Shown in pieces: positions 9,281 to 60,818 of a stretch of DNA of 64,000 nt. The stretch lies in IMG/VR virus record IMGVR_UViG_3300018080_008436, positions 248,001-312,000 of that record; one strand, written 5' to 3'. The notes under the pieces are model-generated. The model made no database searches. It worked only from the letters and a program-made list of their open reading frames with translations, and had not been told where the DNA came from. Position numbers and translations under genes: made by a program. The first letter of the stretch is position 1. Every line of letters begins with the position of its first letter.

Positions 9281-10505
9281 TGCCTGGAGATTTGTAATAA
9301 AATAACTGCATGTCTTTTCTCTGACATGTCAGCGGAGTCAGTTGAATGTTTTCGTCATATCTTCGATAATCTTCTGGCTCTATGCAATAATCAAACTTCC
9401 CAGTGTTGGTTTTGGCCCCCAACATATCTGATAACTCATAAATCAATACGTGCTTACAAACCCTTAATAGACCCTTCACTAACCGTGCCTTTTCCTCTCC
9501 TTTCGGAAGGTGCATAAGAAATCCCATACTAACGCCAAGATCAAAATAGTTGTCTTCATAATTCTCTAAGCAATATTTCCTCATGTCTCGACAGAAAAAA
9601 TGGGCGTTTCTATCTGAAAAAAGTTCCCTAGCTTGATTTAACGCTTCTTCACTGATGTCGAACCCTACAGCTTCACAATCATATCTATCAACAGCATACA
9701 ATAAATTTCTACCTACATTACACCCAACTTCAACGATATTATTTACATCAGCTTCATTGGAAATCTGATCAAAATAATCATACATAGATTTAGTTCGATC
9801 CTTTTTGACCTTAGAATTCAGATAGTTGCCCTTTATGGTCTCACCTTTGTATTTAACATACAAATTCTCTCCCCAATAATTCGCTTTTTTCTTTCTTAAA
9901 ATATAATATTTGTAAGAGCCATCTACCTCATCAAAATACTCATAATTAGGATTGAATGATTTGAATGATTCATCCACTTTCTTAATATCAAAAAGACTAC
10001 AATCAGCTTCATTAACCTCATGAGTTCCTTTATCAAATCCAATAACAATAATCCCATCTTCTTTTAGTATAGAAAACCACTTTTCTAAAGTAATATTTGG
10101 ATTTGGGGCGTGATCTAAAGAATTCGAAAAAATGATATCCCACTTCTCGTTCCAATCTTTTGGAAAATTCGAGAAATCCATTACGAAATCTGCATTAGAT
10201 TCTGGAGAAATATCAAGAGAACTCACAGAAACATTTTTGTCTTTTAGCCCCTCTCTCCAAACATCTCGTTCATGGTTGTTTCTCGTCCCAAGGCAGATCA
10301 TCTCAGAACCGTCTTCAACCAAATCATATATTTTGTCACAGCATTCTAAGTAATGATTTTTATCTCTCTTCTTGTAGGCTTTGGCCTTATGTCTTTTAAC
10401 CTGAGCATCAACATACTCATCTTGACTTACTCCCTCGTCGTAAAACCTTTTCTTAACAAAGTTAAAATCAAAAGTATTTTTAAATGCTCTTTTCTTCTTT
10501 CTCAT
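9270..10505 (-). CDS. Tandem class I SAM methyltransferase
   Basis: CLGTRN..FSNSLDH domain and EVGCNVG..GFDIS..LMHL domain. Confidence 0.75.
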   Translation of the reverse strand: MRKKKRAFKNTFDFNFVKKRFYDEGVSQDEYVDAQVKRHKAKAYKKRDKNHYLECCDKIYDLVEDGSEMICLGTRNNHERDVWREGLKDKNVSVSSLDISPESNADFVMDFSNFPKDWNEKWDIIFSNSLDHAPNPNITLEKWFSILKEDGIIVIGFDKGTHEVNEADCSLFDIKKVDESFKSFNPNYEYFDEVDGSYKYYILRKKKANYWGENLYVKYKGETIKGNYLNSKVKKDRTKSMYDYFDQISNEADVNNIVEVGCNVGRNLLYAVDRYDCEAVGFDISEEALNQARELFSDRNAHFFCRDMRKYCLENYEDNYFDLGVSMGFLMHLPKGEEKARLVKGLLRVCKHVLIYELSDMLGAKTNTGKFDYCIEPEDYRRYDENIQLTPLTCQRKDMQLFYYKSPGIEE

Positions 10506-25618: not shown

Positions 25619-26953
25619 TTAGAGTCTGTTAGCCGCCTCTTCAGACAGCAATGATCTTACTCCATCTCTAAGAATAACATGGGCAGAGTTACTTGAATCT
25701 TTGAACGCATCCAATACAACTGAAAGACCATTTGTCCTACGATCCAAATATGGGTTATCTATCTGTTCAATATCACCAGTTAGAATAACCTTTGTATTCT
25801 CTCCCGCTCTTGTTATGATCGTTTTTATCTCAAGTGGAGTAAGATTTTGAGCTTCATCGATAATGATATATTGATTATGAATACTCCTACCTCTTATATA
25901 AGTTAGAGGCTCAATAAAGATTTTATCACTAAGCTCAGCTATCTTTTTCCCACTCATCTTCTTCTGACCCTTTTTCTCAGGTGATTTTGCTTTATTACTA
26001 TGAACAATCTCCAAAGCATCATAAATGGGTTGCATCCATGGGTCTAACTTCTCATTCACATCTCCTGGTAAAAAACCAATATCTCGACCCATTGGTTGAA
26101 CAGGTCTACTAATGAGCATTTTTTCATACCTTTCTTCCTGCTCTACCATATATTCACCAGCGGCTGTTGCAAGCAAGGTCTTCCCAGTCCCTGCCATTCC
26201 TACCAAACATACCAAATGGATATCATCATCTAACAATGCATCCAAAGCAAAAGCTTGCTCTCTATTTTTTGATTTAATCTTTAATGATGGAGGTAAAAAA
26301 TCTAATCTCTCTACCATAGATCTGTCCTTACTGACTCTGGCAAGCATATTTTTGCTTTCATCTGGACTTTGGACCATTAGGTAGTAATTGCCCCAAGGAA
26401 TGTCATCATCATCAAATACCCACTCTACAGGACATTCATCCTTTAGTTTAATTTCAGCATATGTTTTTCTATTAACCTCAACAGTACGGAATCCTTCATC
26501 AAGAATAACACTTTCGCATACTCTGGTTGCTTCATAGCATTCAGCCCTGATCCCAAGAGCATTCGCTTTCAGTCTAACGTTAATATCTCTTGAAATAACT
26601 ATACACTCATTCTCTGGCTCTTGAGCCTTCATAATATCTGCAATATGAAGTACATGAAAATCGACATCCTTCTCCTTTCTATAGGTTCCTAAGTTGCCAT
26701 TATAAATAACTCTTATTTGACCTTCCCTATCATCTCCTAATCTAACCCCTTTTCTTAAATCCCCCAATTCTCTGAATTTGTCGAGTGATCTAGAAACTTG
26801 ACGGGAGTTTCGCCCTAACGCCCCATTGTCTCTTTTGAATGTGTCTAGCTCTTCAATCACTCCGATTGGAATAATCACAGTATGTTCCTCAAAACTGAAT
26901 ATCGCTTCAGGATCTTGCAACAGAACATTTGTGTCAATAACGAAATTTTTCAT
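25619..26953 (-). CDS. phoH: PIN-PhoH ATPase (PhoH2/YlaK-like)
   Basis: VIDTNVLL PIN; GMAGTGKT, RGRS, DEAQN, TGDIEQID. Confidence 0.93.
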   Translation of the reverse strand: MKNFVIDTNVLLQDPEAIFSFEEHTVIIPIGVIEELDTFKRDNGALGRNSRQVSRSLDKFRELGDLRKGVRLGDDREGQIRVIYNGNLGTYRKEKDVDFHVLHIADIMKAQEPENECIVISRDINVRLKANALGIRAECYEATRVCESVILDEGFRTVEVNRKTYAEIKLKDECPVEWVFDDDDIPWGNYYLMVQSPDESKNMLARVSKDRSMVERLDFLPPSLKIKSKNREQAFALDALLDDDIHLVCLVGMAGTGKTLLATAAGEYMVEQEERYEKMLISRPVQPMGRDIGFLPGDVNEKLDPWMQPIYDALEIVHSNKAKSPEKKGQKKMSGKKIAELSDKIFIEPLTYIRGRSIHNQYIIIDEAQNLTPLEIKTIITRAGENTKVILTGDIEQIDNPYLDRRTNGLSVVLDAFKDSSNSAHVILRDGVRSLLSEEAANRL

Positions 26954-29703: not shown

Positions 29704-30486
29704 TTAGGTTAAAAAATCTTTGTCAACGTAATGCACCATGAACTTACATACAGTATCGATAAGTTCATCAGGCATTCTTTTAAAACATTCGTTCACAAAC
29801 TCATCTGGAACGTTTTTGTAATATGCATGAGCAATTGAGCCAGCCATAGCCGCAATGGTATCGCTGTCTCCACCCATCATTACTGCTTCTCTTATTGTAC
29901 TCTCAAAATCCTCAGAATACAAGAAAGCGTATACAGCTTGCGGAACTGTCTCCTGGCAACTACAATTAAATCCTAGATGCTCAGAGGTCAAAATAAGGTC
30001 CGTTCTGTATCCAAACGACTCTACTGCTTCTCTAATTTCTTGCTTTGTCCCTCCATGCCAAGCTATGAATGTTGCCAAAGCAATTGCTTGAGCACCTTTA
30101 ACTCCCTCTTCATGATTATGAGTCGCATCAGCACTCTTTTTGGCCTCTGCTAGAACATCCTTTTTAGATCTGCAATAGAAAGCAACAGGGCTAACTCTCA
30201 TCGCAGACCCATTGCCATAACTATTATACCCTTCTTCTTGCTCACTTAAAGCCCACTCTTTGAAAGCACTACCATACCCTCTATCTTTGTAATTTCTATA
30301 GTATTCACGAATAGATTGTGAATAGTTTCCTGAATTCATCAAAACATCTGCTACTGCGCAGGTTAGAACAGTATCGTCAGTAAAAATACACTTCTTGTTG
30401 AATAGAAGAAAATTTTTGGTTTTGGGGTGTCTTTTTGGGCCTTCCCAACGAGAGCCTATTATGTCTCCTAAAATCGCGCCTATCAC
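29704..30486 (-). CDS. ADP-ribosylglycohydrolase (DraG/ARH family)
   Basis: GAILGDIIG, TDDT, GNGSAMR, GGDSDT; GTG start after AAAGGAGA. Confidence 0.92.
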   Translation of the reverse strand: MIGAILGDIIGSRWEGPKRHPKTKNFLLFNKKCIFTDDTVLTCAVADVLMNSGNYSQSIREYYRNYKDRGYGSAFKEWALSEQEEGYNSYGNGSAMRVSPVAFYCRSKKDVLAEAKKSADATHNHEEGVKGAQAIALATFIAWHGGTKQEIREAVESFGYRTDLILTSEHLGFNCSCQETVPQAVYAFLYSEDFESTIREAVMMGGDSDTIAAMAGSIAHAYYKNVPDEFVNECFKRMPDELIDTVCKFMVHYVDKDFLT

Positions 30487-31502
30487 AATCTTTCTCCTTT
30501 TACTCTTTCCTTTTCGTACCCTAACCAAACTTTCCAACTTTTCCAGCCTCTATCTTTATAAGTCCTATCTGGCACACTTGGTAAACAAACAGGTCTAGTA
30601 TTTTCTTTCCAATATAAACACCATTCTGTTTTGCTTCTTATTCCCAATTTATGAACGAATTTTTCTGCTTCTTTATAAGGCATAAACCCACTTTTTGCAA
30701 CTTTTATACTCCCCAAATCATAAAATTTGTTCTTTTTCCTTATTAAAAATAAATTCGAAGGAGTGTTATACATATATTCTCTTAAAAGTATCGAACTGTT
30801 CTTAGCCACCCTAACTCTATAATACTTCTCTTTTAAACTTCTAACATTCCCCCTAAAACCATTTATATTTTCTTTTAATTTTAATAACAAACCATATGAG
30901 AACTTCTCACTTCCACTAGTAAGAGATGATTCTATGGAGTTCCTAGATATAGATACATTACCGTCTCCGTCCCATAGCCCTCGTATAAAATCTGGCAGAA
31001 ATTCTTCTGGAACATTAGGCATTTCACATGTCAGGCTTTTTCTCTCAGTTCCACCTATTTTTTTAATTGATTCAACTAAATTTCTACAATAAATGTTCAA
31101 ATGACAATATTTGCTTCTTGTCTCTTTAATGGGTCCATCAAAACCCATCGTTTTTGCGATTAACTCTAATAGATATTTATCTTTATTACTTTGCGTAATT
31201 GAAAACAAACTTTCATAAATACACCCATCTGCCCACCAAAAACCCAAAATATACGCCATATCATGAGTCCATATCTCAAAGAAATCCTCATTTATCGAAT
31301 ATTTATCTCTTTTATAGGACATCTTTTTATACCCCATCCAATCCATGTACGAAACCCATTCCGACTTATATACTTGATGAGGACTGCGAGGAATGAATGG
31401 AGGTCTGTTGTTTTTACACCAATCTTCCCATTCTGACTGCTTTTTAAGACCTAATTGACGTACATATTGTCTTGCTTCTTCAAATAACAGGAATTTACTC
31501 AT
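30483..31502 (-). mobile_element. Free-standing LAGLIDADG homing endonuclease with flanking repeat domains
   Basis: AYILGFWWADG and FIRGLWDGDG motifs. Confidence 0.85.
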
Positions 31503-33762: not shown

Positions 33763-33811
33763 ACAATTATTCCGACACTTATCCCGACATTTTGTCGGGA
33801 TTCAGAAAAAC

Positions 33812-33926
33812 GCCAGTGTATTGCTCATTTATACTACCTCACAAAGTTTAGAATGCTGAATAGAACCTTATTCAAGTTCACTTTTAATAGTACTGTATGG
33901 GTGGGATTCGAACCCACATCTCTGGC
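33812..33926 (-). ncRNA. Permuted tRNA-like RNA carrying CAGCA module
   Basis: GCCAG/CTGGC ends, T-arm first (GTGGG TTCGAAT CCCAC), GAACTT-GAATA-AGGTTC-TATT-CAGCA. Confidence 0.5.
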
Positions 33927-33927
33927 T

Positions 33928-34003
33928 TGGTATCCCCAACGGGAATTGAACCCGTATCTGTTGGTTGAGAACCAACTATCCTAGACCGTTAGACGATGGG
34001 GAC
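33928..34003 (-). tRNA. tRNA-Glu(CTC)
   Basis: Loop TTCTCAA, CCA. Confidence 0.93.
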
Positions 34004-34010
34004 ATTAAAA

Positions 34011-34138
34011 ATGAGTCGGAAGGAATCGAACCTTCATTCCCTGGTTGATTTATTAAACATCAAATAGTTGCTGGAACGAAACTTATACAGTTTCACTTGG
34101 TTTTATGTCCAGGAGTTCTACCATTAAACTACGACCCA
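34011..34138 (-). ncRNA. tRNA-like RNA whose anticodon loop is replaced by a ~65-nt insert with CAGCAA module
   Basis: Intact acceptor, D and T arms, CCTGG/CCAGG stem, no encoded CCA. Confidence 0.7.
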
Positions 34139-34158
34139 AGTTGTATCTCTAATGAGAT

Positions 34159-34235
34159 TGGTCGGGTATGCAGGATTCGAACCTGCGATCTCATCATCCC
34201 AAATGATGCGCCTTACCAGACTAGGCTAATACCCG
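34159..34235 (-). tRNA. tRNA-Pro(TGG)
   Basis: Loop TTTGGGA, CCA. Confidence 0.93.
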
Positions 34236-34239
34236 ATAC

Positions 34240-34406
34240 AGAAGTGTTTTATCCTGTTAAACTATCCCCAACAAGATCGTACTTTAAGTCATCTGACACT
34301 AACTCATTTCTGACCCCAGAATATATTTTATTGTTTTGAATGTCAGTTCGTAACAACTACTTTACACTCTTAAGCCGAGGCTGGGACTCGAACCCAGATC
34401 TCTCCT
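34240..34406 (-). ncRNA. Circularly permuted tRNA mimic (YrlA-like topology)
   Basis: Order AGGAG, T-arm, CCTCGGC, long loop, GTTGGGG, D-arm, CTTCT. Confidence 0.6.
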
Positions 34407-34408
34407 TT

Positions 34409-34499
34409 TGGTGACGCAGACGGGATTCGAACCCGCAAAGGAATCTCTTCCTACCAGATTGAAAGTCTGGTTACTTCAGGCCAATTTGTATACTGCGCC
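34409..34499 (-). tRNA. tRNA-Glu(TTC) with long variable arm
   Basis: Loop CTTTCAA; AGGAA-GAGA-TTCCT extra arm; CCA. Confidence 0.85.
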
Positions 34500-34508
34500 A
34501 TTTTTTAG

Positions 34509-34626
34509 TCAGGACGGCTGGATTCGAACCAACTCCTTTAGCTCCTCAAGCTAAAATAAATATTGCTGTAGCGAACCTTATTGTCAAGTTCATGTTTATA
34601 ACGTGCTACCATTACACTACGTCCTG
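34509..34626 (-). ncRNA. tRNA-like RNA with ~47-nt CAGCAA module between D-arm and anticodon arm
   Basis: CAGGACG/CGTCCTG acceptor, TTAGC-TTGAGGA-GCTAA hairpin, T-arm; no encoded CCA. Confidence 0.7.
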
Positions 34627-34865: not shown

Positions 34866-34931
34866 AAAAAAGCCCTCCTAACGCAAGCTAAGAGGGCACA
34901 AAAAAAGCCCTCCCGCTCATGGCAGAAGGGC
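34866..34931 (-). terminator. Two tandem intrinsic terminators of the Glu/Pro attenuator
   Basis: GCCCTTCTGC-CATGA-GCGGGAGGGC-T7 and GCCCTCTTAGC-TTGC-GTTAGGAGGGC-T6. Confidence 0.88.
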
Positions 34932-34953
34932 CAAAATCATAGTTATGATCTAA

Positions 34954-35031
34954 CTACAGATCGGCTGACCTCCTGCCAAAGGCTGGCGGTTCTTCTCGTT
35001 CTGGTTCTCGAATGTACATGTAGTTGTTCAT
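34954..35031 (-). CDS. Leader peptide MNNYMYIREPEREEPPAFGRRSADL (Glu/Pro attenuator)
   Basis: AAAGGA RBS; 4 GAA + 3 CCR within 8 codons. Confidence 0.8.
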   Translation of the reverse strand: MNNYMYIREPEREEPPAFGRRSADL

Positions 35032-35056
35032 AACAAATTTTCCTTTCGTTACCCCC

Positions 35057-35087
35057 ATTATAAACCATCCTAGAGACTTTTCAAGTC
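35057..35087 (-). promoter_or_regulatory. Promoter GACTTGAAA-N16-TATAAT
   Basis: Shared motif. Confidence 0.8.
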
Positions 35088-55187: not shown

Positions 55188-55278
55188 TGGTGGGAGTAGC
55201 AGGACTTGAACCTGCGTTTACCTTTCGGCCTCCTGTGTATCAGACAGGCGCTCTAACCAAATACTGAGCTATACTCCC
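55188..55278 (-). tRNA. tRNA-Ile(GAT) with long variable arm
   Basis: Loop CTGATAC; GCC-GAAA-GGT arm; CCA. Confidence 0.85.
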
Positions 55279-60460: not shown

Positions 60461-60818
60461 GGAACAGGTTAGCAATTTTGGTTTTCATTTCAAGTGAAAG
60501 TTTTGGTTGCTGTAACTAACCTTCTATCCTAAATTAAAAATTTGAACAGACTGACTTGTTTTTTTTAGCATAAAAAATTTTGAGTTGCTGAATGCAGTCT
60601 TATATCAAATTGTTTTTCTAAATTTTCCTTTTTCTTGTTTTCAAAGAAACAAGTGAAACAGCTTGGGTTTTCCATCCTTTATTTCAGACCTCGATGAATT
60701 TGGGTCCTCAAATTTATTTTTAAAACCCTCTCGACTGGGTTCTCGTTTTATTTCTGTCAGGGCGACTCTGACGCTCGTTTTATCGTGTTTTTTGGTTGCA
60801 GTAACCAAGCTTTATTCA
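60461..60818 (-). ncRNA. Array of three structured RNA units with helix-(C/T)AGCAA-type motif
   Basis: Units 60461..60529, 60540..60610, 60654..60818 with covarying stems; third has ACTGCAA. Confidence 0.7.

What the first reader, a model, noticed from the sequence alone, without database searches (positions are those of the whole stretch)
33812..34406. Two circularly permuted tRNA mimics (YrlA-like), each right after a tRNA-Glu
Seen: 34240..34406 reads anticodon 3' strand (AGGAG), AGAT, T-arm, acceptor 3' strand, ~100-nt loop, acceptor 5' strand, D-arm, anticodon 5' strand (CTTCT). 33812..33926 has the same start (GCCAG AGAT T-arm) and closes with CTGGC, but its D-arm is unclear. Each starts 1-2 nt after a tRNA-Glu CCA. 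Known: bacterial YrlA Y RNAs have this T-arm-first topology. Inference: Y-like RNAs or mimics of anticodon-cleaved tRNA.
Basis: partly seen in the sequence, partly recalled or inferred. Interest (0 to 1): 0.7.

Follow-up and report, generated by a model that had tools for sequence, protein, structure and literature searches.

The report
Permuted tRNA-shaped RNAs in megaphage
Two genes inside a giant phage's tRNA cluster encode tRNA-shaped RNAs whose halves are in swapped order, so they have a tRNA body but no anticodon loop and no free acceptor end; similar units in related phages suggest a selected, Ro-independent class of tRNA mimic whose function is still unknown.

Summary
34406..34240 (A) and 33926..33812 (B) each read: anticodon-stem 3' strand, AGAT, canonical T-arm, acceptor 3' strand, linker (100 / 49 nt), acceptor 5' strand, D-arm, anticodon-stem 5' strand. 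They start 2 and 1 nt after a tRNA CCA. B's D-arm is resolved (GTAT/ATAC). Of 68 T-arms in the >=508-kb phage, only these two have a matching downstream 5' half; the chance rate is 0.46% per T-arm.

They are not YrlA members: no Ro-binding helix or motif, no TROVE gene, no Rfam hit. They are not two-piece tmRNAs and not BHB-type permuted tRNA genes.

Syntenic tRNA arrays of related phages (DHH neighbour 61-72% identical) hold nine more units of the same architecture. Their closing and T-like stems covary. The acceptor arm ranges from 8 nt to long hairpins. In one subtype a covarying kissing loop replaces the T/D-loop contact. The link from A and B to those units rests on architecture and position, not on strong sequence homology.

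Best reading: stable, non-decoding tRNA-body mimics cut out of the tRNA operon. Function is inferred only. No RNA data exist. The phage encodes RtcB and an Rnl2-type ligase, so maturation into real tRNAs is not excluded.

The parts
34240..34406 (-). Permuted tRNA-shaped unit A (167 nt): closing strand, AGAT, T-arm, acceptor 3' strand, 100-nt linker, acceptor 5' strand, D-arm, closing strand
   Evidence: Sequence; topology scanner and shuffle control; uniform parse with 14/14 core pairs; un-permuted form gives a cloverleaf
34381..34406 (-). Unit A 5' part: closing strand AGGAG (34406-34402), AGAT, canonical T-arm CTGGG-TTCGAGT-CCCAG (34397-34381)
   Evidence: (orphan T-arm)
34273..34380 (-). 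Unit A acceptor 3' strand CCTCGGC (34380-34374), T, and the 100-nt linker that closes the acceptor stem; the linker holds a weak promoter-like match (CTGACA-17-TATTCT, 34346-34318)
34240..34272 (-). Unit A 3' part: acceptor 5' strand GTTGGGG, ATA, D-arm GTTT-AACAGGATA-AAAC, A, closing strand CTTCT
   Evidence: local hit of the relatives-only model on the D-arm (34246-34265, 9.8 bits, E=0.072)
33812..33926 (-). Permuted tRNA-shaped unit B (115 nt): GCCAG, AGAT, T-arm GTGGG-TTCGAAT-CCCAC, CCATACA, 49-nt linker, TGTGAGG, TA, D-arm GTAT-AAATGAGCA-ATAC, A, CTGGC
33850..33889 (-). Copy c5 of hairpin element E (GAACTT-GAATA-AGGTTC, then TATTCAGCA) inside unit B's linker
   Evidence: model R1, 50.3 bits, E=9e-10
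34409..34499 (-). tRNA (anticodon UUC, 91 nt, long variable arm) whose CCA ends 2 nt before unit A
   Evidence: ARAGORN; Rfam tRNA 51.3 bits
33928..34003 (-). tRNA-Glu(CUC) whose CCA ends 1 nt before unit B
34159..34235 (-). tRNA-Pro(UGG), starting 4 nt after unit A; RNase P cleavage at its 5' end would set unit A's 3' end (inferred)
   Evidence: the processing step is inference
33763..33811 (-). Spacer after unit B: T-run (GTTTTT), a remnant of a tRNA-Pro T-loop/3' acceptor strand, and a triplicated 5' start of tRNA-Pro(GGG)
   Evidence: sequence; T-run statistics
34509..34626 (-). tRNA c1, with element E inserted between the D-arm and the anticodon arm (position 26/27); an intact 7-nt anticodon loop TTGAGGA follows E
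   Evidence: Rfam tRNA 45.6 bits; R1 49.9 bits; orthologues in relatives
34011..34138 (-). tRNA-like gene c4, with a 64-nt insert containing element E in place of the anticodon loop
   Evidence: Rfam tRNA 46.7 bits; R1 45 bits

Best explanation
A and B are circularly permuted, tRNA-shaped non-coding RNAs encoded inside a tRNA operon of a >=508-kb phage.

Shown:
- Each unit can fold into a tRNA body in which the RNA's own 5' and 3' ends pair as a loop-less 'anticodon stem'.
- A canonical T-arm and D-arm can form the elbow, and the 7-bp acceptor stem is closed by a linker.
- So there is no anticodon and no free CCA end, and the unit as encoded cannot decode.
- Units of the same architecture sit in the syntenic tRNA arrays of related phages. 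There the closing stem and T-like stem covary while the acceptor arm is dispensable (as short as 8 nt). This points to selection on the tRNA core (elbow plus closing stem), not on aminoacylation.

Inferred:
- The units are transcribed with their neighbours.
- Their 5' end is made when the upstream tRNA's 3' end is matured 1-2 nt away.
- Their 3' end is made by RNase P cutting the next tRNA (A), or by termination or cleavage at a U-run (B and most relatives).
- The product is a nuclease-resistant tRNA-body mimic that binds proteins recognising the tRNA elbow and anticodon stem. It would act as a decoy or cofactor in the conflict over tRNA cleavage and repair; the phage carries RtcB and an Rnl2-type ligase.
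- Because A and B keep a 7-bp acceptor stem, RNase P may also nick them, as shown for M. smegmatis YrlA.
For: - Topology and non-randomness.
- Both halves are tRNA-like.
- Tertiary-core features are kept in all eleven units: TA (U8/A9) before the D-stem, D-loops starting AA, a purine at position 26, and a 4-nt joiner ending in T in 10 of 11.
- Nine further units lie in seven loci of six distinct related phage contigs (L048/L049 are the same phage in two samples) that share IF3...DHH...ADP-ribosylglycohydrolase synteny. They sit after a tRNA CCA, before a tRNA, or in a 5' UTR.
- Covariation over ten units: 99.3% of 140 stem cells paired against 70% in shuffles (0/2000), and 10 of 14 pairs with double changes.
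- Formal count on the model-aligned subfamily: 85.7% against 66% (0/500), 22 double-change cells against 8.3 (0/500), and the signal is lost when the partner strand is slid.
- RNAalifold independently recovers the closing stem and T-arm for the group that contains A and B.
- Elbow contact: canonical T-loops go with GG (in B, GAG) in the D-loop. TATGGANN loops go with CC(A/G), and TATGAAAT with TCATA/CAT. That is a compensatory tertiary change.
- A T-run follows 7 of 11 units against 12 of 86 ordinary tRNAs (p=0.0008).
- RtcB (226 bits) and an Rnl2-type ligase (78 bits) are in the same phage.
Against: - There is no transcript evidence at all. Only DNA runs hold this sequence, and the three samples are identical, so there is no population variation to read.
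- A model built from the relatives' units does not find A or B as full-length hits. permB's best outside match (L055_a, 18/23 in the D-arm) barely exceeds background (17/23). Homology of A and B to the covarying subfamily is therefore not shown.
- Complementarity between the two halves of one unit would exist automatically if each arose recently from one tRNA gene, so it does not prove selection.
- The spacer next to B contains obvious duplication debris.
- No binding partner is identified, so the decoy/cofactor function is inference only.
Confidence: 0.5

Rival explanations
1. Genuine circularly permuted pre-tRNAs. RNase P and 3' trimming open the acceptor stem, CCA is added, and a phage RNA ligase (Rnl2-type for 3'-OH/5'-P ends, or RtcB) seals the two ends into an anticodon loop, giving a functional tRNA. 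This would be the first such case in a bacterial virus.
For: A and B keep a full 7-bp acceptor stem, a canonical T-loop and D-arm, and a 5-bp anticodon stem. Their ends lie exactly at neighbouring tRNA processing sites, which would leave ligatable 3'-OH/5'-P ends. RtcB and an Rnl2-type ligase are encoded. The unpaired flanks could give a 6-9-nt loop (for example GU+CCAAA for A and GUU+CCAA for B if the upstream tRNA is cut after its discriminator). Neither unit encodes CCA, unlike most tRNAs of this phage.
Against: There is no bulge-helix-bulge and no leader-trailer pairing (0 extra pairs), and no splicing endonuclease. The loop composition depends on arbitrary trimming, and no reading gives an obviously needed anticodon; the phage already has about 69 tRNAs covering all amino acids. 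Related units lack an acceptor stem (L055_a has 8 nt) or have non-tRNA T-loops, so the class as a whole cannot be pre-tRNA. B's 3' end has no adjacent processing site.
Confidence: 0.15
2. Cis-acting operon elements. The tRNA-shaped fold plus the following U-run would act as a terminator or attenuator, as a processing punctuation mark, or as a stabilising end structure for flanking RNAs. There would be no trans function.
For: T-run enrichment directly after the closing stem (7/11 against 12/86). One unit sits in a 5' UTR between a promoter and an ORF (L055:2983-3052). The ends abut neighbouring tRNAs tightly.
Against: Unit A has no U-run and runs straight into tRNA-Pro. A multi-branched structure with a 5-bp closing stem is a poor intrinsic terminator, and the consensus scan calls none at A or B. 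Conservation of the elbow contact is not needed for termination.
Confidence: 0.15
3. Non-functional debris. Each unit would be the inner part (3' half, spacer, 5' half) of a tandemly duplicated tRNA gene whose outer halves were lost, tolerated in a phage with many redundant tRNAs.
For: Any tandem tRNA pair already has this order of parts (the second-best R2 hit spans such a junction). The array shows duplication debris next to B and a repeated Pro / insert-tRNA / Glu / unit block. A and B are no more similar to each other than to unrelated tRNAs. There is no sequence orthologue and no RNA data. The acceptor stem of A has three G-U pairs and B has a mismatch.
Against: Both deletions would have to end precisely at the anticodon-stem boundaries, twice. 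41 of 42 stem pairs are intact, and the changes in A's acceptor are all wobble-preserving. Units of the same architecture recur at equivalent slots in six distinct related phage contigs and covary.
Confidence: 0.12
4. YrlA-type Y RNAs that recruit a host-encoded Ro60/Rsr protein.
For: Same permuted tRNA-like topology. YrlA-like RNAs occur in phages, and Ro/Y RNA genes often sit near RtcB (PMC4201824, PMC7824862).
Against: There is no room for a Ro-binding helix and no GNCGAAN0-1G motif in A or B. No TROVE gene in 508 kb. No Rfam YrlA hit.
Confidence: 0.05

Closest known systems
YrlA (bacterial Y RNA-like A; Rfam RF02553)
   Same: Order of parts is the same: terminal stem, T stem-loop, closed acceptor stem-loop, D stem-loop, terminal stem. 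YrlA has the same L-shaped tRNA mimicry, with variable acceptor and variable-loop lengths, and a member with a 7-bp acceptor is cut by RNase P and receives CCA. It is often linked to RtcB.
   Different: A and B have no long Ro60-binding helix, no GNCGAAN0-1G motif, no rsr/TROVE neighbour anywhere in the phage, and no match to the Rfam model. They sit inside tRNA operons flush against real tRNAs.
Circularly permuted tRNA genes of Cyanidioschyzon merolae, prasinophytes and Thermofilum pendens (Soma 2007; review PMC3978253)
   Same: The 3' half is encoded upstream of the 5' half with an intervening sequence between the acceptor strands. The break point is in the anticodon loop, and both halves rebuild a full cloverleaf.
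   Different: Those precursors carry a bulge-helix-bulge at the termini, are circularised by the splicing endonuclease plus RtcB, and become decoding tRNAs. Here there is no BHB, no endonuclease and a bacterial-type phage (it carries tmRNA, IF3 and LpxR genes), and related units lack an acceptor stem.
Two-piece (permuted) tmRNA
   Same: The T-arm and acceptor 3' strand are encoded before the acceptor 5' strand, and an intervening segment is excised.
   Different: There is no tag reading frame and there are no pseudoknots. Rfam tmRNA_permuted scores 15.1 bits, E=1.9. The phage has a normal one-piece tmRNA (143.5 bits).
Nicked tRNAs / tRNA halves that signal to RtcR (PMC10159003), and band-7-associated tRNA next to RtcB (cited)
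   Same: Both are a tRNA body with a discontinuity at the anticodon, in a genome that encodes RtcB.
   Different: Those are cleavage products of real tRNAs, or intact tRNA-like genes. Here the discontinuity is genetically encoded, and no RtcR or Band-7 link was examined.

Membership tests
YrlA / bacterial Y RNA | tRNA-like module in the order T-arm, closed acceptor stem-loop, D-arm, enclosed by a terminal stem | tested here: met
   definition
YrlA / bacterial Y RNA | Long terminal helix carrying the Ro60-binding motif GNCGAAN0-1G on its 5' strand | tested here: not met
   The closing stem is 5 bp with 0 extra pairs from the flanks, and the motif is absent in A and B. The flanks are occupied by tRNAs 1-4 nt away.
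YrlA / bacterial Y RNA | Encoded next to an rsr (Ro60/TROVE) gene | tested here: not met
   PF05731 absent from G000 (296 kb) and G001 (476 kb); the positive controls matched
YrlA / bacterial Y RNA | Match to the Rfam RF02553 covariance model | tested here: not met
   The only hit in the region (16.6 bits, E=3.5) lies elsewhere, at 34113-34192. No hit in the relatives' loci that were scanned, L047, L048, L050 and L052, at E<=0.1.
Circularly permuted tRNA gene (BHB type) | 3' half upstream of 5' half; together they form a complete cloverleaf | tested here: met
Circularly permuted tRNA gene (BHB type) | Leader and trailer pair to form a bulge-helix-bulge cut by a splicing endonuclease | tested here: not met
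   No pairing beyond the 5-bp stem; no tRNA_int_endo domain in the 296-kb record G000 (the extra 212 kb of G001 was not searched for it)
Circularly permuted tRNA gene (BHB type) | Matured to a contiguous, CCA-tailed, decoding tRNA | not testable with these tools
   No RNA runs hold the sequence
Two-piece tmRNA | Tag reading frame with resume codon and pseudoknots between the acceptor 5' strand and the closing helix | tested here: not met
   Only a D-arm (17 nt) lies between them; Rfam tmRNA_permuted 15.1 bits, E=1.9
Clade-specific permuted tRNA-shaped units (defined here) | Closing stem, 4-nt joiner, 5-bp T-like hairpin, variable closed middle, TA + 4-bp D-arm, purine, closing strand; located in or beside a tRNA array | tested here: met
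   Uniform parse of ten units, 13-14 of 14 core pairs each; an eleventh in L064
Clade-specific permuted tRNA-shaped units (defined here) | Detectable sequence homology of A and B to the relatives' units | tested here: inconclusive
   Model R2 (relatives only) gives only a local D-arm hit on A (E=0.072), nothing on B, and 13 bits (E=0.022) on L055_a. permB against L055_a is 18/23, against a background of 17/23.

The most novel reading that the evidence does not exclude
A bacterial virus uses genuinely permuted tRNA genes. The two halves would be released by the ordinary tRNA-processing cuts of their neighbours and by RNase P, then sealed in the anticodon loop by a phage RNA ligase (Rnl2-type or RtcB). 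That would be a protein-endonuclease-free route to a functional tRNA that anticodon-targeting host nucleases cannot pre-empt at the gene or precursor level. The same machinery might also handle the element-E inserts in neighbouring tRNAs.
Probability: 0.12. Interest if true: 0.9.

Novelty: new variant of a known kind. Interest (0 to 1): 0.6.

Why it matters
Permuted tRNA-like RNAs are known in two settings: as the effector module of Ro-bound YrlA Y RNAs, and as BHB-processed pre-tRNAs of a few algae and one archaeon. The same topology appears here as a stand-alone unit inside phage tRNA operons, with no Ro protein and no splicing endonuclease. The related units covary in secondary structure and even in the elbow tertiary contact.

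If these RNAs are expressed, three things would follow:
- The tRNA body (elbow plus anticodon stem) would be a selectable module in its own right in phage-host conflicts over tRNA cleavage and repair.
- It would give a simple system for asking what YrlA-type tRNA mimicry does without Ro.
- Standard tRNA finders would be missing part of the RNA repertoire of huge phages.

The neighbouring tRNAs with a conserved extra hairpin (element E) at position 26/27, one of them next to RtcB, raise a separate question: whether bacterial viruses have a non-group-I form of tRNA insert or splicing.

Tried and rejected
- Rfam at gathering and at E<=10 thresholds over the region: only tRNAs. The YrlA and tmRNA_permuted hits are noise.
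- Phage GenBank BLAST of the array: only generic tRNA similarity.
- Public runs: three DNA samples carry an identical sequence and no RNA run holds it, so there is no end mapping and no natural variation. G000 and G001 are identical across the array.
- IMG/VR relatives through the DHH and IF3 proteins: only the same phage, plus one 38% relative without tRNAs.
- Element-E pattern in IMG/VR: only this phage; the other hits lie in coding sequence.
- Nested-gene idea (5' half of A pairing with 3' half of B across Pro-c4-Glu): rejected, 4/7 and 3/5 pairs.
- Kissing-loop type units in this phage: none.
- Relatives-only covariance model R2: did not recover A or B.
- IMG/VR scan with the kissing-subtype signature: seven chance hits in coding DNA.
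- Metagenome scan with a T-loop + D-arm signature: chance matches and CRISPR arrays whose repeat happens to fit the pattern; none scores with R2.
- MAFFT + RNAalifold on the kissing subgroup found only the T-like stem, because the variable middle and the loop lengths misalign the ends.
- ARAGORN acceptance turned out to be a weak test of specific pairing, since it also accepts A5'+B3'.
- Other ARAGORN 'intron' tRNAs in the left 212 kb are not supported by Rfam.
- The RtcB neighbours have no recognisable endonuclease domain.
- Burroughs & Aravind 2016 could not be read.
Full report
CONTEXT

The window is G000:C1:35648-99647, part of a 296-kb IMG/VR virus record. A near-identical 476-kb record (G001) extends it by 212 kb on the left. 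The merged sequence is 508,680 bp, about 38% G+C, with about 69 ARAGORN tRNAs and a one-piece tmRNA (143.5 bits). IF3, tmRNA and LpxR genes point to a Gram-negative bacterial host.

All tRNAs near the finding are on the minus strand. The array, read 5'->3' on that strand, is:
- Glu(UUC) 34856-34781
- Pro(UGG) 34750-34672
- tRNA c1 with an insert, 34626-34509
- a 91-nt tRNA with anticodon UUC, 34499-34409
- unit A, 34406-34240
- Pro(UGG) 34235-34159
- tRNA-like c4 with an insert, 34138-34011
- Glu(CUC) 34003-33928
- unit B, 33926-33812
- Pro(GGG) 33762-33685

So the block Pro / insert-tRNA / Glu / unit occurs twice.

THE OBSERVATION

Unit A reads AGGAG, AGAT, CTGGG-TTCGAGT-CCCAG, CCTCGGC, T, a 100-nt linker, GTTGGGG, ATA, GTTT-AACAGGATA-AAAC, A, CTTCT. 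All 21 stem pairs can form; four are G-U.

Unit B reads GCCAG, AGAT, GTGGG-TTCGAAT-CCCAC, CCATACA, G, a 49-nt linker, TGTGAGG, TA, GTAT-AAATGAGCA-ATAC, A, CTGGC. It has one A.A mismatch.

A starts 2 nt and B 1 nt after a tRNA's CCA. A ends 4 nt before tRNA-Pro.

A purpose-written scanner required a T-arm, then within 220 nt a 7-nt strand complementary to the acceptor 3' strand, a D-arm, and a 5-nt strand complementary to the anticodon 3' strand. Run on all 68 T-arms of the 508-kb sequence, it returned only A and B. With shuffled downstream sequence it fires in 62 of 13,600 trials.

ARAGORN at default stringency calls a cloverleaf for each un-permuted unit and for none of 300 versions with a shuffled 5' half. 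It also accepts the chimera A5'+B3', so it certifies that the halves are tRNA-like rather than that they pair specifically. The specific pairing follows from the pair counts: own halves 7/7 and 5/5 for A, 6/7 and 5/5 for B; the A5'+B3' cross gives 4/7 and 3/5.

WHAT THEY ARE NOT

YrlA. The authors call YrlA a look-alike of circularly permuted tRNAs. YrlA is also defined by a long Ro60-binding helix with GNCGAAN0-1G on its 5' strand and by a position next to rsr. Here:
- The closing stems are 5 bp, cannot be extended by the flanks, and lack the motif.
- No TROVE domain exists in either record, while the control genomes matched.
- The Rfam YrlA model is silent on A and B even at E<=10.

Two-piece tmRNA. 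Only a D-arm lies between the acceptor 5' strand and the closing strand. The Rfam permuted-tmRNA model gives 15.1 bits, E=1.9.

BHB-type permuted tRNA gene. No leader-trailer pairing exists that could make a bulge-helix-bulge, and the 296-kb record has no splicing-endonuclease domain (the extra 212 kb of G001 was not searched for it).

RELATED PHAGES

The DHH phosphoesterase gene just downstream of the array has hundreds of relatives. Context was obtained for eight of them, at 53-74% identity; all the further units lie in the six loci at 61-72% identity. Most of the loci conserve the synteny IF3, a 174-aa protein, tRNA array, DHH, ADP-ribosylglycohydrolase.

These arrays begin Glu(UUC)-Pro(UGG) and carry the c1-type tRNA. 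They also carry further units of the same architecture as A and B:
- L055:1026-1084, which lies 2 nt after a CCA and 7 nt before tRNA-Pro(GGG), the same slot as B. It has a canonical T-loop and its 'acceptor' is only 8 nt.
- L055:2983-3052, with a canonical T- and D-loop, located in a 5' UTR behind a TTGACA...TATAGT promoter.
- Five units between tRNA-Pro (or another tRNA) and the next tRNA: L047:5633-5719, L050:5008-5081, L054:1508-1581, L054:1702-1793 and L064:68-145.
- Two units 1 nt after a tRNA-Glu CCA: L050:5463-5538 and L048:4302-4380.

All eleven share this plan: closing strand, 4-nt joiner (AGAT, AGGT, AAAT, TAAT or TTGC), a 5-bp hairpin with a 7-8-nt loop, a variable closed middle (10-118 nt), TA, a 4-bp D-arm whose loop starts AA, a purine, and the closing strand.

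COVARIATION

Over ten units, 99.3% of 140 stem cells pair, against 70% when the 3' partners are shuffled (0 of 2000 shuffles reach the observed value). Ten of 14 pairs show double changes, and nearly every closing stem has a different sequence.

For the seven clearly homologous units (model R2, 52-75 bits), a model-guided alignment gives 85.7% paired against 66% (0/500) and 22 double-change cells against 8.3 (0/500). The signal collapses when the partner strand is slid by one to three columns.

RNAalifold on plain MAFFT alignments independently recovers the closing stem and T-arm for the group containing A and B (9 of 13 pairs with compensatory changes). For the other group it recovers the T-like stem (4 of 5).

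The loops covary too. Units with TTCGANN loops have GG (B: GAG) in the D-loop, as in real tRNAs. Units with TATGGANN have CC(A/G) and up to 5 bp of loop-loop complementarity (TATGG:CCATA). The two with TATGAAAT have TCATA or CAT. The elbow contact therefore seems to be kept by different means. The acceptor arm is free to shrink or grow.

LIMITS OF THAT ARGUMENT

- The link between A/B and the covarying subfamily is architectural and positional. R2, built without A and B, gives only a local hit on A's D-arm (E=0.072), nothing on B, and 13 bits (E=0.022) on L055_a.
- B's D-arm segment matches L055_a best (18/23), but background matches reach 17/23.
- A and B are about 70% identical to each other and to arbitrary tRNAs.
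- Pairing between the two halves of one unit would also be inherited automatically from a single parental tRNA gene.
- The spacer after B contains a remnant of a tRNA-Pro 3' end and a triplicated tRNA-Pro 5' start, so the array does undergo duplication.
- There are no RNA data, and the three samples that hold this phage are identical.

MECHANISM

Shown: the encoded RNA has a tRNA core with a loop-less anticodon stem formed by its own ends, and an acceptor stem closed by a linker. As encoded it can neither decode nor be charged.

Inferred:
- The unit is co-transcribed with its neighbours.
- Maturation of the upstream tRNA's 3' end creates the unit's 5' end.
- RNase P at the next tRNA (A), or termination or cleavage at a U-run (B and most relatives), creates the 3' end. 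A T-run follows 7 of 11 units against 12 of 86 ordinary tRNAs, p=0.0008.
- Because A and B keep a 7-bp acceptor stem next to a single-stranded linker, RNase P may nick them. This was shown for M. smegmatis YrlA, whose 3' fragment then receives CCA.

What the class conserves is the elbow plus the closing stem, not the acceptor end. I therefore favour a tRNA-body mimic that binds tRNA-recognising proteins, acting as a decoy or cofactor in tRNA cleavage and repair. The phage encodes RtcB (226 bits) and an Rnl2-type ligase, and RNA-repair systems are a known theme of jumbo phages.

Rivals:
- A true permuted pre-tRNA sealed by a phage ligase. This is attractive for A and B, whose ends would be 3'-OH and 5'-P, but there is no consistent anticodon loop and the class as a whole does not fit.
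- A cis-acting terminator or punctuation element.
- Debris.
- A Y RNA for a host Ro protein.

ELEMENT E (SIDE FINDING)

B's linker contains a 40-nt element: a 6-bp hairpin followed by yyTnCAGCA. It recurs in tRNA contexts:
- Between the D-arm and the anticodon arm (position 26/27) of c1 (34626-34509), c2 (L039:18200-18316) and c7 (L039:15772-15897). Each of these keeps a normal 7-nt anticodon loop.
- In place of the anticodon loop in c3 (G000 103577-103698) and c4 (34138-34011).
- In place of the whole anticodon arm in c6 (G000 ~26650-26740).

The stem covaries (GAACTT/AGGTTC, GAACCT/AGGTTC, GAAACT/AGTTTC, GAGCTT/AGGCTC, GAGTCT/AGACTC): 100% paired, with two double-change pairs.

The c1-type tRNA with E at 26/27 is conserved in the relatives, with further stem variants and with different anticodons. 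c2 lies about 100 nt upstream of the RtcB ORF. In c3, c4 and c6, no simple excision leaves a loop with U33.

Whether E is an extra arm, a new kind of intron or a mobile insert is open. E also contains a TTGACA-17-AATATT promoter-like match in c1.

VERDICT

The YrlA and tmRNA interpretations fail as memberships, but the topological analogy with YrlA holds. The best reading is a Ro-independent, operon-embedded variant of the permuted tRNA mimic. It is supported by recurrence and covariation in related phages, but for A and B themselves it still lacks transcript evidence and sequence-level orthologues.

Noticed in passing
window 34509-34626 (-), 34011-34138 (-), 33850-33889 (-); L039:15772-15897, L039:18200-18316; G000:C1:103577-103698, G000:C1:26650-26740; relatives L050:5102-5220, L052:1678-1794, L047:5727-5843, L054:1890-2027, L055:1172-1310, L064:165-286: Element E is a ~40-nt insert: a covarying 6-bp hairpin followed by yyTnCAGCA. 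It sits inside tRNA or tRNA-like genes. In three tRNAs it lies between the D-arm and the anticodon arm (26/27) with the anticodon loop intact; elsewhere it replaces the anticodon loop or the whole arm. The 26/27 form is conserved across related phages, where the tRNA carries different anticodons. It could be an extra arm, a non-group-I intron or a mobile insert; this is unresolved.
   Followed up: partly
L039:18412-19680 (+) = G001:198412-199680; G001:C1:98705-99301 (-): The phage encodes RtcB (226 bits) about 100 nt downstream of the E-bearing tRNA c2, and an Rnl2-type RNA ligase. No Ro/TROVE was found in either record; the tRNA splicing endonuclease and Rnl1 searches covered the 296-kb record only, and the Rnl1 search had no positive control.
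   Followed up: partly
relatives: L047:5633-5719, L050:5008-5081, L054:1508-1581, L054:1702-1793, L064:68-145, L050:5463-5538, L048:4302-4380: A subtype of permuted tRNA-shaped unit in which the T-loop/D-loop contact is replaced by Watson-Crick loop-loop complementarity. That contact itself covaries (TATGG:CCATA against TATGA:TCATA).
   Followed up: yes
downstream of units: window 33811-33806; L047:5721-5726; L054:1584-1590; L048:4381-4386 and others: A run of at least 4 T follows 7 of 11 units within 11 nt, against 12 of 86 ordinary tRNAs (p=0.0008). This suggests termination, a U-tail or a cleavage site.
   Followed up: partly
window 34872-35084 (-): A strong promoter-like site (TTGAAA-16-TATAAT, 35084-35057) is followed by two tandem terminator-like hairpins (34932-34906, 34897-34872) immediately upstream of the first tRNA of the array. 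This may be a leader/attenuator or a small RNA. No clear promoter for the array itself was found.
   Followed up: no
window 33763-33811 (-): Duplication debris: a remnant of a tRNA-Pro T-loop plus 3' acceptor strand forms a mini-helix with a copy of the tRNA-Pro 5' strand, and the 5' start of tRNA-Pro(GGG) is triplicated.
   Followed up: no
window 34409-34499 (-), 55188-55278 (-); G000 9997-10084, 105941-106028 and others: Several tRNAs for class-I amino acids (Glu, Ile, Lys, Cys, Asn, Gly, Met) are 87-92 nt long and have a hairpin in the variable region. Extra arms seem to be common in this phage's tRNAs.
   Followed up: no
G000:C1:197395-197469 (-): A tRNA with anticodon CUA (an amber suppressor; ARAGORN labels it 'Pyl'). 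A relative also has one (L056:3408-3485). Possible TAG recoding of some genes was not examined.
   Followed up: no
L025:839-917 (-) = G000 ~26138-26216: An aberrant tRNA-Ala-like gene (G3:U70, anticodon loop TTTGCAA) whose D-arm is replaced by another hairpin. Rfam matches it only as the tRNA-like ends of tmRNA (28.3 bits).
   Followed up: no
window 60504-60622 (-); L055:2940-2975: The 3' half of element E (AAGGnTnGTTACAGCAA) occurs without the hairpin in non-tRNA intergenic or 5' UTR regions. In L055 it lies just upstream of a permuted unit.
   Followed up: no
window 30483-31502 (-): A LAGLIDADG homing-endonuclease gene lies between the DHH and ADP-ribosylglycohydrolase genes. It is present at the same place in L054 but absent in the other relatives, so it is probably a mobile insertion.
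   Followed up: no
G000 against G001 (contig coordinate = G000 + 212,353): The 'provirus' record of 296 kb is a piece of a phage of at least 508 kb. The 476-kb record overlaps it and adds tRNA arrays, a tmRNA, RtcB and LpxR. The IMG/VR provirus boundaries look arbitrary.
   Followed up: partly
L079, L084, L091, L128, L132, L138 (metagenome contigs): These are unrelated CRISPR arrays with the repeat GTTTAAATCGTACTATGTAGTATGGAAAC. They matched the search pattern by bridging two repeats.
   Followed up: yes
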